A stretch of DNA of 64,000 nucleotides from Stylophora pistillata (lineage: Eukaryota): assembly GCF_002571385.2 (NCBI RefSeq), contig NW_019217962.1, positions 236,357 to 300,356 on the forward strand, in the 5' to 3' direction. The notes under the pieces are model-generated. The model was not told the origin of the DNA and did not search any database. It saw only the letters and a list, made by a program, of their open reading frames with translations. Of the stretch, positions 45,552 through 55,941 are shown in pieces. The position numbers were made by a program, and so were the translations under genes. Every line of letters starts with the position of its first letter. The stretch's first letter is position 1.

Positions 45552-48500
45552 TCACGGTGGATGACAATGAACGTCAGCTACCTCGTGGTACTGTCGCCAC
45601 TCCCCCTCTTTCCGATTGTGGTAGAAGACCTGGGTACAATTAGGATCTACGGCAAGCACATTGACCTTTGGTTCTACTGGTGACGGATCAAGCCACGAAG
45701 CAACAGCGCGAATTCCACCGGTCTCACAGCGAATCTTGTTCAGAAAGTAACGGTTCTTCACTGCAAAGTAACACAGCTTGCTGTTTGTTACCAGAACCCG
45801 TGAAAAACATCTAAGAGGTTATAGTGCTTATATGTGGTTACATAGTGCTTGGGGTCACTTAGAAAAATGTTGAACCAGTCATATAACCCGAAACAAAAAG
45901 GAGTTGCAACCAAATATGATAGCGTCAGTCAATGCTTGGAGCTAACAGAACTTAAAAGAACCTCGTTGGAATTCATCTTTTGTTCCTTGTTAACAAATCG
46001 GTCATTTTACAAATTGTGTATAAATGACAGTGGAGGTAGCAGTTGCACTGTTCACGCCCACGCCCTCCCCCTTCCTCTTTAAAAATAACAACAACTAAAA
46101 AGTGTTAGGATCCACTACGGCTCAGTAGAGAACTCCCTTTTCATTTATCTATTCCTCTTCAGCCATTTTTTGCATCGAATAAGCGTGATTTATCTAGGTT
46201 GCCACACAAGCTCAGCATTTAAAAGAGGACATTTTAACAGACATTTTCTTGCTTGATTACCTCACATCTTTCGAGTGTTGGCTTATGCACAGGATTTGGT
46301 GTAGGTCAAAGGAGAGATATCTGAATGATCGTTTCATTCTCATTACCTGCCCCGCTTACAGCGTTTTAAAAGTGACAGGAGAAATTACATTCTGTTCATT
46401 CCTAGGAATCAGAGAGTAAAAGAAAAGGACAGATCAAATTTTCTTAATACCTACCTGTTTCATTCATTTTGTTGAACCTCAGGCTCAATTTCTTTTTCAG
46501 ATTCTTCCAAGTAAACTCCAACCCTTTTACAATAATTTCTTCCTTAGAAACAAAACAGAGAAGAAGAGTCAGGCTTAAGGAAACAACTCCAATTTTTGGT
46601 GCTAATTAGCTTTTTGATTTGAGATCCCTCCAAAAATTGAAAACCAACGAGGTCGTTAGTCCGTACAGCTTTGTGATTTTTGGAAGGTTTTCACATAAGT
46701 CAGTCGTCATAAAACACATTTCAGAGCGAATTTTGATTGAGAGTTGAAAAACCGAAAAAAAGGTCTCAAACTAAGGTCTCAAAGTAAGAAAGCGCAAATT
46801 CCTTGCGGCGAGGGAAAGCGCAAGTGATCAGTTTATTTGTTACGAGGGTGATGCGAGTTTTCCGAACCAATCGCAGGGCGAAGTAAAGGAAAAACAAATG
46901 CTATATCTCATAGCCGCTGTTAGCTCCCTTTTACCAATTCGCATATTCGAGAACTTGCTTATGATTAGAAAGAAAGGCACGATTTATCGTTTGAAATGAT
47001 CTTAAATAGTCACTGTTGGTACAATGTTCAAAACTACTTCAAGAGCAAATCCACACGTGGCTCGAATTATTCCACTTTCCCATAGCCCACCAACGTTTTT
47101 ATGTAAGACTGAGTTTCTTAAAGGAAAGAAAGCTCTTGGTTTTTATTACAAAGCCAATTAACTCTCGAGTGTCGAAAGTAAGTTTGGATTGGTTCAGTTT
47201 TTGTCCGCATTGCTCAAGCTCTGATTCGCCGAAAACACTCTCATCACTCTCTCCCAAACAATCAAATTCAGAACTAACACCAATGACAATTGGTCAACTC
47301 ACGTTTTCCCGCGCTTTAGGCAGTAAGCTTGTTTTAACTTTAATTCTTATTGGCTACCTTCGCTCTGATACACCGTTGTCATCACTTTGATTTTGGCTCA
47401 ACAACGCTCGAAAAGCGCTTTAATAGAAAGAGAACCCTTACGTCTGAATCCTTAGGATAGAATTTAAAGGTGAGCGTGTGGTCTTTCATACTGTTCGCTC
47501 TGCACTTGGCTTTGACGTAGGGAGAACTCGGAGCTAACATCAGGGCACAAACGAGAGATGCTACTGCCAGGAATACAGTTACTGCTAGCAGTTTCTTCCA
47601 CAGCCCTAAAAATGACAAAATAGAGCATTATGCATTGGTGTCACTATCTGAATTTTACTGATTATCCTGGCCCGCCTCGATTAGCACTGCTATCTGCGGA
47701 GCCAGGGGAATAAGGATTTATCATTGTCACACGACTAATCATTTCTGGCATTCTTTTCCGTTCAGATATCAATATGGATATGTGGGATAATTTTGGTTTT
47801 ATCAACTGAGTTGATAAAGTAAACTGGCCACCGGAAAGAGTTTCAAAGCTGACGTTTCTACCGTTAGCCCTTCGTCAGAGCGAAAGATAGTTCCGTGTCA
47901 TGTGGAAGAAACGTCATTTGTAGAGGCAATAGACAAGAGAGGAGAGTCTTTCCGGAGACTAGGAGTGGCCTTATCATTGGACACTACCATGGGAAAACCG
48001 AATCCAATCATTGTTAAGTGCTATAAATTTTGTGGTTTTGACGTTGGATGAGGTGTCCTGTCATCAAAACTTCCGGGTATCTCAGAGTTCACTTTAGCTG
48101 ATTTCCTGTCCAGTGGAGTTGCGTCACTGTATGACTATGAAGTAACCTTGGATACTTATCCATCGCTCCCGAACATTATTGCGTGTCCCCAGAAAGAGGT
48201 AATAGGATTCTGTTATACTTTGGCTAATAGTACCCCCCTTAGTTGACCCTTTTATAAATTAACTACATGAGAGTTTGTGCACCCTTAAAGGCAAGTATGT
48301 CATCTGAAATTTGTGTCAATCAAAGAGAAAACCTAAGTGAAAAAGAATCCCCACCTAAGCGCTCCTAGCTCTTAAATAATACAAGTGCAGGCGTTAGCGA
48401 CCTTCTAGAATTGCTCCCAAACTTATCAAAGTGGTTGTCTCAGAAAAATAATTTTCATGGTGACATGAGAATCCCATGGTCGTAAATCGCACTCTATAGG

Positions 48501-54500: not shown

Positions 54501-55941
54501 GCGCAAAGGTCACCTGAACTCTTCTATCTGAGTGTCGGACAAAATTGGTTTCTCCTACATGATTCGGCGGCAGGCTGGGAGGCTGGTATCGACAAGGCGC
54601 TTGTAAATCAACCCTGGGCTGTGCAGCACAGGAAAAAAGGTCTCCGTAACCGAAGTTCTCGTTTTGAGAGTCAACGTGTGGTGGAGCCGGGTGGGTTCCA
54701 AAGGGAGAAGGCGTGTTTGTTCTTTCGCTGTCTGGTGGTGTGGGGCAACTGGGCTGAAGAGGATTGAAGGGTTTATGTTCAGTGTGAATCACTAGCTGTG
54801 ATAGAAAGTCGGGCGGGTCCATGGAGACCAAGCTATGATTATCCGGGGGAGGGTCTGGTGAGAGGAAAGAAAAAGATATCATGGACAGTTAGTAAACATA
54901 ATCAGCAATAGTTTAGAGCAAATTCTAGTCATTCTTTTAAAACCATATCCAAAAATATATTATTCCTATTCATTCTAATAATCCGTTCGTAATTCTGTAA
55001 AAAAAAGTTAACTTTATCTGTAGCTCCTTCGAATTGAGTATGAACATTGATTTTATGCTAAATGTCAGCCTTTTTCTTTCACCTTTGTAACAAGCTCGCT
55101 GGCTGTCAGTGGAGAGAATAGGAAAGCAGGGTAAGCTAAAAATGGCACCTTTTAGCCGATCTTCTCCACTAACTTAGGGCCTTGCAAAGGTTTATTTCCT
55201 TTCTTTCTGCTTTATACCTCTCTAAAATCCAAGGCTAGGTAAATAATCCAGTTTTGAAAGCCAGTGATAGATACTTCCGTGCAAATGTCAAACGGTATAA
55301 TAATACAAGTAGCCGAAATGGAAACCTTAAAGACGTTTACTGTCGACTTTAGTTTCGAAACAAAATCCATCGAAGACATCATCGAATTAAATATATTTTG
55401 GTAAGGTCTTAGTTCAAAGAAACAGTGCTATCACGCCGGTCGCACCTGCCAACTACGTCACTGGTCGTAAACCATTGAGCTTTCTTTGGTCATCTAAATT
55501 AAAGCGACTGCCTTACTAGCACCGCTTAAAAAGTGCCCTGATTAAGTGCCGAGATCGAGATAGCACAAGGGAACTACTAAATAAAACACCGCCAAGTTTT
55601 TTCAGGGAAATGCTTCAAAGACAAACTCATCCCAAAATAATGCAATCCGGCAGATTGACTTAACCTGCCGTCGCTTTTCATCAGCTCGATAGGGTAGTTT
55701 CAGCTTTGAAATGTAGAATGCAAACAACAGCTAGGTAGACAAAGCCATGACACACAGTCACAGAACATGACGACAACTTAAATTTTTACAATGACGGTTT
55801 AATTATGCGAAAAAAGAAAAAAACATTCCTCTAGGATCGAAAGACTGATAAACAACTATGTAGTACCTTACCAAGGAATTCTTCCAGAAGCTCAGCTGTA
55901 TCGAAACGTTGATACACCGGCTGGTTGGATGGGCTAGACAT
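45552..55941 (-). CDS. About 695-aa single-pass membrane protein with MYRF-like organisation and a Peptidase-G2-like intramolecular chaperone domain; exons 55941-55872, 54854-54388, 53540-53378, 52796-52593, 51574-51503, 50948-50652, 49976-49848, 49084-48860, 47605-47442, 46542-46455, 45760-45552
   Basis: Eleven GT-AG exons join in phase into a 2088-nt open frame. Order: FDTAELLEEFL; Pro-rich region with PTPPDSE; about 170-aa basic globular region; HDIAYY...FEEGDVVG...LAGVITRSAYLVGN...VCIIGEIKVKVIGEVKPGELIY...PGVATA...LIGYAM; helical/coiled-coil segment; TM helix LLAVTVFLAVASLVCALMLA; Cys-containing C-terminal domain. The gene model is well supported; the naming is inference. Confidence 0.85.
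47788..47886 (-). repeat. Penelope/retrozyme-type repeat with a degenerate minimal hammerhead motif
   Basis: Minus strand GCT-CTGACGA-AGGGCTAACGGTA-GAAAC-GTC-AGC, followed by the hairpin TTTATCAACT-C-AGTTGATAAA. Confidence 0.65.
48498..48840. mobile_element. MITE family with AGGGAC..TAAGC / GCTTAAGGTCCCT termini; other copies at 56658-56953, 60237-60603 and degenerate at about 21490-21815
   Basis: Terminal inverted repeats with internal (GACGGC/GCCGTC)-like repeats. Three copies align along their length; the 48.5 kb copy is in the opposite orientation. Confidence 0.8.
49215..49410. repeat. High-copy TAACCCTT...AAGGGTTAA repeat family; related pieces at about 2632-2790, 7268-7720, 28975-29095, 35300-35490, 54095-54230, 56033-56130, 61853-62240
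   Basis: Copies share the blocks AATTTCTCCTTACAATATCA, ACAAGTGATGAGAATA, ACCAAATTCTC and GAGAATTACT...GAAAGGGTTA. Confidence 0.7.
50015..50191. mobile_element. Short MITE with hAT-like termini; second copy at 61934-62109
   Basis: TIR AGGGCTCGACAC / GTGTCGAGCCCT and internal CTAGCCA repeats. The two copies align end to end. No clear TSD. Confidence 0.8.
53730..53806. repeat. Purine-rich minisatellite, about 12-bp unit GGAGACAGGGAG
   Basis: About six imperfect tandem units. Confidence 0.9.

What the first reader, a model, noticed from the sequence alone, without database searches (positions are those of the whole stretch)
45552..55941. MYRF-like membrane-tethered factor that uses a different phage chaperone domain (Peptidase-G2-like instead of S74/ICA)
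Seen: an intact 11-exon frame of about 695 aa, fragmented in the ORF track. Its order is acidic motif, Pro-rich region, globular basic domain, chaperone-like domain, coiled coil, single TM, C-terminal domain. Established: this is the layout of myelin regulatory factor (MYRF), an ER-anchored transcription factor that trimerises and releases itself through a phage-tailspike-type Peptidase_S74/ICA domain. As recalled, the MYRF N-terminus has IDTSILEEYI and DSPPDS, echoed here by FDTAELLEEFL and PTPPDSE. The S74 signature (SD.R.K) is absent. In its place is D.A...EEGDVVG...GVIT..AYLVGN...IGEIKVKVIGEVKPGELI...PGVA...LIGYAM, the pattern of the Peptidase_G2 autocleaving chaperone of phage phi29 gp12 and related appendage proteins. 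Inference: an independently assembled or domain-swapped MYRF analogue, meaning a second domestication of a phage trimer-folding chaperone by an animal. Many introns and ordinary animal neighbours argue against contamination.
Basis: partly seen in the sequence, partly recalled or inferred. Interest (0 to 1): 0.9.

Follow-up and report, generated by a model that had tools for sequence, protein, structure and literature searches.

The report
Cnidarian membrane protein with phage domain
A real, expressed coral gene encodes a membrane-anchored protein whose middle part has the fold of the self-cleaving tip of a bacteriophage tail appendage. It is laid out like the animal gene switch MYRF but built from a different virus part, and whether it cuts itself free is untested.

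Summary
An 11-exon, 695-aa gene lies on the minus strand at 55941-45552. A transcript-derived protein (P0099) matches all 11 exons. RNA-seq joints tie exons 2-9 into one mRNA.

The family is known only as "uncharacterized protein". It occurs across Cnidaria (corals, anemones, Hydra, Hydractinia, Clytia, a jellyfish). This genome has at least five further copies.

No Pfam model matches. The predicted structure of residues 358-495 matches the phi29 gp12 C-terminal fragment (Peptidase_G2) best of 48,161 solved chains: Z 12.9, rmsd 2.5 Å, 24% identity. A distant hydrozoan-clade member repeats this with Z 11.5. All other good matches are virus capsid-decoration proteins. Protein-language-model neighbours and BFVD hits are phage tail-fibre or G2 proteins.

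The alignment starts at the gp12 cleavage-site Asp, which is invariant in the family. Both invariant G2 glutamates are lost; one is an invariant Tyr.

The layout parallels MYRF: disordered acidic and Pro-rich N-terminus, Ig-like domain, phage-type domain, helix, TM, Cys-rich C-terminal domain. No domain is shared with MYRF. Cleavage, trimerisation and DNA binding are untested.

The scan noted the same idea before on another piece of this genome (s1-783817).

The parts
55872..55941 (-). Exon 1 (start codon at 55941); acidic motif FDTAELLEEFL
   Evidence: P0099 residues 1-23, 100% identical
54388..54854 (-). Exon 2: Pro-rich disordered region (PTPPDSE), basic motif, and the start of the Ig-like domain at about 54516
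   Evidence: the loose end of the RNA contig at 53542 reads into the end of this exon; model pLDDT is below 50 for residues 1-136
53378..53540 (-). Exon 3: Ig-like domain
   Evidence: joint 52795/53377
52593..52796 (-). Exon 4: Ig-like domain, ending at about residue 296 (52609); conserved DLDSVY motif
   Evidence: joint 51574/52593; generic Ig matches with Z about 8
51503..51574 (-). Exon 5: 72-nt disordered linker. It lies inside, but out of frame with, the 101-aa ORF 51499-51804
   Evidence: joints 51574/52593 and 50948/51503
50652..50948 (-). Exon 6: first part of the phage G2-like domain. The invariant Asp358 codon is at 50853-50851 (motif H-D-I-A-Y-Y), followed by EEGDVVGFF and AGVITRSAYL
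   Evidence: the structural alignment starts at residue 358, which pairs with gp12 Asp692
49848..49976 (-). Exon 7: middle of the G2-like domain (VCIIGEIKVKVIGEVKPGELIY..PGVA)
   Evidence: hhalign block P 5e-4 against 44 G2 domains
48860..49084 (-). Exon 8: end of the G2-like domain (to about 49002), then the start of the long helix
   Evidence: joint 49083/49847; the loose end at 48859 reads into exon 9
47442..47605 (-). Exon 9: end of the helix, transmembrane segment (about 47591-47523), start of the C-terminal domain
46455..46542 (-). Exon 10: C-terminal domain
   Evidence: GT-AG borders read from the sequence; not covered by the RNA lay
45552..45760 (-). Exon 11: C-terminal domain with conserved Cys residues, then the stop codon

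Best explanation
Shown:
- This is a real, spliced, expressed gene of a Cnidaria-wide family of single-pass membrane proteins.
- There is no signal peptide. Basic residues lie on the N-side of the TM. Four conserved Cys and a conserved N-x-T lie on the C-side. This predicts a type II topology: N-terminus in the cytoplasm, C-terminus in the lumen or outside.
- The cytoplasmic part runs in this order: a disordered acidic/Pro-rich region, an Ig-like beta sandwich, a linker, a domain with the fold of the C-terminal auto-chaperone of the phage phi29 tail appendage gp12 (Peptidase_G2 / gpD-like superfamily), then a long helix that runs into the membrane.

Inferred:
- The phage-type domain trimerises the protein next to the membrane, as its phage relatives do.
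- The N-terminal half is then set free to act in the nucleus, as in MYRF.

The favoured route is cleavage just before the invariant Asp358, the position of the gp12 cleavage site. This would need chemistry different from phage G2, because both conserved glutamates are gone. I put self-cleavage at about 0.3 and release by another protease at about 0.15. Phage ancestry of the domain, by an old capture before the cnidarian radiation, I put at about 0.85.
For: - Gene and transcript.
- Family range (Pocillopora, Montipora, Porites, Stylophora, Oculina, Nematostella with at least 3 genes, Actinia, Exaiptasia, Hydra with 2 genes, Hydractinia with at least 4, Clytia, Rhopilema).
- Fold, first model: residues 358-495 against 3gqh_A give Z 12.9, rmsd 2.5 Å, 114 residues aligned, 24% identity. 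This is rank 1 of 48,161 chains.
- Fold, second model: the distant member P0089 against 3gqh_A gives Z 11.5, rank 1. Every one of the 21 chains with Z >= 5 is a virus protein.
- BFVD: 106 phage hits at E <= 1e-3, including 'preneck appendage protein' at 2e-9 and tail fibres.
- ESM Atlas: the nearest clusters are all Uroviricota, and 16 of 30 carry PF11962.
- hhalign is collinear: P 0.005 for the whole domain, 5e-4 for the C block, and 2.8e-4 over 112 columns once the G2-specific insert is removed. That alignment pairs Asp358 with Asp692.
- Asp358, Ile359 and Tyr361 are invariant in 32 members, and position 360 is A or G as in G2.
- Topology features.
- N-domain: the language-model neighbours that carry a transcription-factor family name are Ig-fold DNA-binding domains (COE1, LAG1, SPT23/MGA2, p53). 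Scores are 0.75-0.85, so this is only a lead.
Against: - Glu695 and Glu698, invariant in 121 G2 domains, are Tyr (invariant) and a variable residue here. Canonical G2 catalysis cannot operate.
- The Pfam Peptidase_G2 model finds nothing in the exons, in full-length members or in the genome. PHROGs and PDB sequence searches are blank.
- The profile-profile probability is low (7-41%).
- Foldseek ranks capsid cement proteins above gp12 for the second model. One member has a weak Phage_cement hit.
- The N-domain gives only generic Ig matches (Z about 8) and carries a net charge of only +3. DNA binding is therefore not shown.
- The models are monomers. No trimer was predicted.
Confidence: 0.45

Rival explanations
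1. Static trimeric membrane protein. The phage-type domain serves only as a trimerisation or folding module, as in capsid cement proteins. Nothing is released. The protein works at the membrane, for instance as a receptor or scaffold whose Cys-rich C-terminal domain faces the lumen or the outside.
For: Both G2 glutamates are lost. The fold is shared with non-cleaving capsid decoration proteins at Z 8-10.7, and Foldseek ranks these first for the second model. The N-domain gives only generic Ig matches. The family is expanded in tandem in this genome, which is common for receptor-like families.
Against: Asp, Ile and Tyr are invariant exactly at the G2 cleavage-site position. The long disordered acidic/Pro-rich N-terminus and a cytoplasmic Ig-fold domain with transcription-factor-like neighbours fit a released regulator better.
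Confidence: 0.35
2. The domain descends from a capsid cement or decoration protein (Pam3 gp6 / E217 gp24 type) rather than from a tail-appendage G2 chaperone. In that case the analogy with autocleaving chaperones is misleading.
For: Weak Pfam Phage_cement hit on P0053 (E 9e-4, below the cut-off). Foldseek top hits are 8hdt_G and BB1 cement proteins for the second model. Cement proteins score Z 9-10.7.
Against: VIA-align ranks gp12 first for both models, with the highest identity (24% and 19%) and an alignment that starts at the cleavage-site Asp. Atlas neighbours carry PF11962. The best BFVD hits are tail fibres and preneck appendage proteins. The D-[hydrophobic]-[A/G] motif is shared with G2.
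Confidence: 0.25
3. There is no phage ancestry. The similarity is convergence on a simple beta fold, or an artefact of the AlphaFold models.
For: Sequence-only evidence is weak. The alignments used for folding are shallow (32-34 sequences).
Against: Two independent models from members about 25% identical give the same top hit, with pLDDT 80-96. In the second search all chains with Z >= 5 are viral. The language-model search, which uses no structure, points to the same phage families. The sequence alignment and the structure alignment agree in register.
Confidence: 0.1
4. Contamination or a phage/bacterial insert that was mis-assembled into the animal genome.
For: None found.
Against: The gene has ten GT-AG introns, two of them inside the phage-type domain. 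The mRNA is polyadenylated and spliced. Orthologues and paralogues occur in many cnidarian genomes. The neighbours are animal genes.
Confidence: 0.01

Closest known systems
C-terminal auto-chaperone domain of the phage phi29 pre-neck appendage protein gp12 (Peptidase_G2, PF11962; PDB 3GQH, 3SUC)
   Same: Same fold: Z 12.9 and 11.5, rank 1 of 48,161 chains, 19-24% identity. Same domain borders. The alignment starts at the cleavage-site Asp (Asp358 pairs with Asp692). Collinear motifs are D-hydrophobic-A/G, GVIS/T, the VxxxGxxxVxV hairpin with a G-D/E turn, and G-x-A.
   Different: It scores below every sequence-model threshold. It lacks the invariant Glu695 and Glu698. It lacks a stretch of about 50 residues (gp12 roughly 741-790). 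It sits in the middle of an animal membrane protein, followed by a helix and a TM, and not at the C-terminal end of a beta-helical tailspike. It is split by two introns.
MYRF (myelin regulatory factor) and Dictyostelium MrfA: membrane-tethered transcription factors released by a phage Peptidase_S74/ICA domain (PMC3742443, PMC3742440, PMC3828593)
   Same: Same order of parts: Pro-rich N-terminus, Ig-fold domain, phage-derived domain, helix, single TM, lumenal C-terminal domain. The predicted type II topology matches. In both, a phage tail-protein chaperone-type domain lies just before the membrane anchor.
   Different: No NDT80/PhoG, Peptidase_S74 or MRF_C domain is detected. The phage domain has a different fold class (gpD-like beta domain, not the S74 ICA). 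There is no Ser-Lys dyad. Cleavage and DNA binding are untested. The family is restricted to Cnidaria as far as seen.
Phage capsid cement/decoration proteins (Pam3 gp6, XM1, E217 gp24, T1, BB1, HFTV1; Pfam Phage_cement PF22758; ECOD gpD-like)
   Same: Same fold at Z 8-10.7. One weak Pfam hit.
   Different: Z and identity are lower under VIA-align. These proteins are free-standing capsid proteins that do not cleave. They were not checked for the Asp motif.

Membership tests
Peptidase_G2 (PF11962) | Match to the Pfam model above its gathering score | tested here: not met
   No hit on any exon, on ten full-length members at E <= 0.1, or in the six-frame genome search. The same model scores 325 bits on gp12.
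Peptidase_G2 (PF11962) | Three-dimensional fold of the gp12 C-terminal fragment | tested here: met
   3gqh_A gives Z 12.9 (rmsd 2.5 Å, 114 residues, 24% identity) for P0099 and Z 11.5 for P0089. Both are rank 1 of 48,161 chains. These are predicted models, not experimental structures.
Peptidase_G2 (PF11962) | Cleavage-site motif x|D-[YFL]-[AG]-E-Y-F-E-S, with Asp692, Glu695 and Glu698 invariant | tested here: not met
   The Asp and the A/G are kept and invariant. Glu695 is replaced by an invariant Tyr, and Glu698 by a variable residue (121 G2 domains against 32 family members).
Peptidase_G2 (PF11962) | Position at the extreme C-terminus of a trimeric tail spike or fibre | tested here: not met
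   The domain spans residues 355-495 of 695 and is followed by a helix, a TM and a 125-residue domain.
Peptidase_G2 (PF11962) | Trimerisation, autocleavage and ATP-dependent release | not testable with these tools
   Needs biochemistry. Only monomer models were available.
MYRF family | NDT80/PhoG DNA-binding domain | tested here: not met
   No Pfam hit on full-length members. No NDT80 or MYRF chain appears among the top structural matches of residues 143-296, which are generic Ig only.
MYRF family | Peptidase_S74 / ICA domain with a Ser-Lys dyad | tested here: not met
   No Pfam hit. The central domain has a different fold.
MYRF family | Single TM after the chaperone domain, with type II topology | tested here: met
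   A helix at 502-566 contains the hydrophobic stretch at about 548-570. Basic residues lie on the N-side. Conserved Cys and a sequon lie on the C-side. This is prediction only.
MYRF family | MRF_C1/C2 C-terminal domains | tested here: not met
   No Pfam hit. The C-terminal domain of the second model has no PDB match above Z 3.1, but it was barely tested.
MYRF family | Self-cleavage, nuclear entry of an N-terminal trimer, and DNA binding | not testable with these tools
   Needs expression experiments.
Phage_cement (PF22758) | Match to the Pfam model above its gathering score | tested here: not met
   One member only (P0053): 19.8 bits against a cut-off of 27, E 9e-4.

The most novel reading that the evidence does not exclude
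Cnidaria carry a whole family of self-releasing, membrane-tethered transcription factors. The family arose by a second, independent capture of a phage tail-protein chaperone (G2-type rather than S74-type). It cleaves before an invariant Asp by chemistry that no longer uses the glutamates of phage G2.
Probability: 0.3. Interest if true: 0.9.

Novelty: new variant of a known kind. Interest (0 to 1): 0.75.

Why it matters
MYRF has been the only known case in which an animal uses a phage tail-spike chaperone to trimerise and release a membrane-bound transcription factor.

A second family with the same layout but an unrelated phage domain would show that this solution was found twice. It would give a natural comparison for how folding-coupled proteolysis works. 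It would also add a cnidarian-specific class of candidate regulators, several genes per species, that current annotation calls "uncharacterized".

If the proteins never cleave, the finding is still the first sign of the gpD-like / G2 virus fold as a building block of an animal membrane protein. In the PDB search here that fold matched virus proteins only.

Tractable models exist. Nematostella, Hydra, Hydractinia and Clytia all carry members.

Tried and rejected
Searches that found nothing:
- Per-exon Pfam.
- Pfam on ten full-length members, apart from one weak Phage_cement hit.
- PF11962 against the whole genome.
- PDB sequence searches with exon 6 and with the family profile.
- PHROGs on 34 members.
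- Pattern scan of viral contigs with the family alignment. It gave 64 pattern matches, none confirmed.

Weak or uninformative results:
- hhalign of the family against a single gp12 sequence, or against 44 G2 domains, gave only weak scores because of a G2-specific insert. Removing the insert is a post-hoc step, so I use it only to show the register.
- The NDT80 search of the genome rang nowhere, not even in the controls, so it says nothing.

My own errors, corrected:
- My first exon guesses were wrong for exon 5 (I took the long ORF) and for the end of exon 9. Phase arithmetic and P0099 corrected both.

Not available:
- The phi29 gp12 structure paper (Xiang et al. 2009) is not held. The cleavage site Ser691|Asp692 rests on my own knowledge, plus the fact that the deposited C-terminal fragment 3GQH starts at residue 692.
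The unnamed Logan and JGI members were placed through named cluster mates instead.

Left out on instruction:
- The spliced product of the window was never joined or searched as a joined sequence. Exons were searched by reference, and the database protein P0099 (97-100% identical for eight exons, 86% for exons 5 and 9) stood in for the whole protein.
- The N run at about 32.2-33.0 kb was left alone.
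Full report
**The gene.** The finding lies on the minus strand of an intron-rich, AT-rich animal sequence. 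Reading splice sites and phases gave 11 exons that sum to 2,088 nt, which is 695 codons plus the stop (corrected). The protein P0099 is 695 aa and was predicted from a 3,356-nt Logan contig without introns. By tblastn it maps to 11 collinear blocks of the window. Eight blocks are 97-100% identical. The blocks for exons 5 and 9 score 86% because they run past the exon ends.

The 101-aa ORF at 51499-51804 is not an exon. Only 72 nt of it (51574-51503), in another frame, are coding.

**The transcript.** Public RNA runs of the same organism hold about 0.29 of the sampled words of 48800-53600, close to the exon share of that stretch. Laying two polyA contig sets and two raw-read runs gave five joints: 52795/53377, 51574/52593, 50948/51503, 49976/50652 and 49083/49847. 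All end CT..AC, which is GT..AG on the minus strand.

One 2,170-nt contig carries exons 3-8. Its loose ends read into exon 2 and exon 9. In the stranded raw-read run X21, exonic first mates lie almost only on the + strand, which fits a minus-strand RNA.

Junctions 1/2, 9/10 and 10/11 rest on P0099 and on GT-AG borders only. Neighbouring genes are a rhodopsin-type GPCR and a Cys-loop channel exon.

**The joined step.** Exons were searched by reference, and P0099 stood in for the whole product.

**The family.** A phmmer search of exon 6 against 1.84 billion representatives gave 92 hits, 22 of them at E <= 1e-10. Full-length members are 500-950 aa long and are named only "uncharacterized protein". 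They occur in these taxa:
- Stony corals: Pocillopora, Montipora, Porites, Stylophora, Oculina.
- Sea anemones: Nematostella (at least three genes), Actinia, Exaiptasia.
- Hydrozoa: Hydra (two genes), Hydractinia (at least four), Clytia.
- Scyphozoa: Rhopilema.

Every named member is a cnidarian. In this genome the family profile also hits a cluster of at least five further genes on contig C202, and others on C97.

I did not re-examine that piece.

**Sequence searches are blank.** None of the following gave a significant match:
- Pfam on the exons.
- Pfam on ten full-length members. The only hit was a sub-threshold Phage_cement match on one Nematostella paralogue.
- PF11962 on the whole genome.
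- PDB sequence searches.
- PHROGs.
- A pattern scan of viral contigs.

**Structure of the central domain.** AlphaFold2 on P0099 with 32 family sequences gave four confident parts:
- a beta sandwich at residues 137-296;
- a beta domain at residues 355-495;
- one long helix at 502-566 that contains the hydrophobic segment at about 548-570;
- a C-terminal domain at residues 580-693.

Residues 1-136 and 300-353 are disordered.

VIA-align against 48,161 representative PDB chains, run without Foldseek, ranks the phi29 gp12 C-terminal fragment first. 3gqh_A gives Z 12.9, rmsd 2.5 Å, 114 residues aligned and 24% identity, with model 358-495 on chain 692-854. Virus capsid decoration or cement proteins follow: XM1 at 10.7, HFTV1 at 10.6 and Pam3 at 10.2. 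Pfam places Peptidase_G2 at gp12 643-854.

A second model used P0089, a member whose closest named relatives are hydrozoan and which is about 27% identical to P0099. Its mean pLDDT is 82. It again puts 3gqh_A first: Z 11.5, with model 31-173 on chain 692-854. All 21 chains with Z >= 5 are virus proteins.

**Other lines of evidence for phage kinship:**
- Foldseek against BFVD gives 106 phage hits at E <= 1e-3, led by tail-fibre-like proteins and "preneck appendage protein" at 2e-9.
- A language-model search of residues 345-500 returns only Uroviricota clusters, 16 of 30 with PF11962.
- Profile-profile comparison with 44 non-redundant G2 domains is weak but collinear. P is 0.005 for the whole domain, 5e-4 for the C block and 0.03 for the N block, and crossed controls give 0.2-0.3.
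- After removing a G2-specific insert of about 50 residues, the alignment spans 112 columns at 24% identity with P 2.8e-4. It is in the same register as the structure, and the reversed control gives 0.2. This step is post hoc, so I use it only to show the register.

**A caveat on G2 versus cement.** For the second model Foldseek ranks cement proteins above gp12. Membership of the gpD-like / G2 / cement fold group is therefore solid. The finer assignment to the tail-appendage G2 branch is favoured but not proven.

**The cleavage site.** From my own knowledge (Xiang et al. 2009, not held here), gp12 cleaves between Ser691 and Asp692. The deposited C-terminal fragment does begin at residue 692.

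In 121 G2 domains, Asp692, Glu695, Tyr696, Phe697 and Glu698 are invariant. In 32 family members the aligned Asp358, Ile359 and Tyr361 are invariant. Position 360 is A or G, as in G2.

So the Asp is kept and both glutamates are lost. The strict conservation argues for a function at this spot. The loss of the glutamates argues against the phage chemistry.

**The other parts.**
- The N-domain matches only generic Ig domains, such as KIT D4 and SYG-2 at Z about 8 and the NF-kB p52 IPT domain at 6.4. It does not match NDT80. Its language-model neighbours that carry a transcription-factor family name are Ig-fold DNA-binding domains: COE1, LAG1, SPT23/MGA2 and p53. Scores are 0.75-0.85, so this is only a lead.
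- Topology is predicted as type II. There is no signal peptide. Basic residues precede the TM. Four conserved Cys and a conserved sequon follow it.
- The C-terminal domain has no PDB match above Z 3.1, but that part was barely tested.

**Comparison with MYRF.** The order of parts and the use of a phage tail-protein domain next to the membrane anchor are the same as in MYRF (PMC3742443). No domain is shared with MYRF. The reading that survives is an independently assembled analogue, not a domain swap.

No paper in the held library links Peptidase_G2 to animals or describes this family.

The genome also holds nine Peptidase_S74 matches. Whether one of them is the true MYRF was not followed up.

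**Verdict.**
- The structural core of the interpretation, a phage G2-type domain in a MYRF-like layout, is supported.
- The functional core is untested: trimerisation, self-cleavage, and action as a transcription factor.
- My estimates are about 0.45 for a released regulator (0.3 by self-cleavage), about 0.35 for a static trimeric membrane protein, and about 0.85 for phage ancestry of the domain.

Noticed in passing
window 51499-51804 (-): A 101-aa open frame overlaps exon 5 but is not coding. Only 72 nt (51574-51503), in another frame, are spliced into the mRNA.
   Followed up: yes
window 49122-49443, 50088-50248 and 48800-48860: Intronic stretches have very high depth in RNA contigs (word depth up to about 20,000). 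They show many loose ends and 'goes back' joints. They look like dispersed repeats transcribed from many loci.
   Followed up: no
G000 contig C202 about 199-439 kb; contig C97 about 505-533 kb: The family profile hits a tandem cluster of at least five further genes with the phage-type domain, plus many N-domain-only matches. In some copies the second half of the domain lies in one exon. This is probably the piece noted earlier as s1-783817.
   Followed up: partly
G000 C85:298224-298403, C85:306123-306287, C742:77528, C244:282682, C40:893134: The genome has nine Peptidase_S74 matches. Several lie in very long open frames without stops, up to about 2,300 aa. These are intronless giant ORFs carrying the other phage chaperone domain.
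   Followed up: no
window 11044-12075 (-): An intronless 343-aa rhodopsin-family GPCR (7tm_1, E 2e-50).
   Followed up: partly
window 31355-31762 (-), next to the N run at about 32212-32960: An exon encodes the transmembrane region of a Cys-loop ligand-gated channel (Neur_chan_memb, E 5e-24). The adjacent N run was left untouched.
   Followed up: partly
P0009, P0036, P0066 (hits of exon 6): Giant bacterial repeat proteins match the EEGDVVGFF..T.ID.LT segment of exon 6 in 9-19 repeated stretches. One is a Bordetella VCBS-domain protein of 4,178 aa. This is probably a shared beta-hairpin motif.
   Followed up: no
BFVD A0A481YT87 (rank 24): A 161-aa Marseillevirus LCMAC101 protein has the same fold (TM 0.59 on the target, 18% identity). 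Giant viruses of eukaryotes therefore also carry this domain and could have been a route of transfer.
   Followed up: no
P0016 (Nematostella LOC5513327 isoform X2), alignment A1 columns about 990-1010: This annotated isoform lacks most of the hydrophobic TM stretch that the other members have. It may be a soluble splice form or an annotation slip.
   Followed up: no
window 53640-53831 (-), intron 2: A simple repeat of a ctccctccctgtct-type unit gives open frames of SLSPS repeats on one strand and GRQG/GDRE repeats on the other.
   Followed up: no
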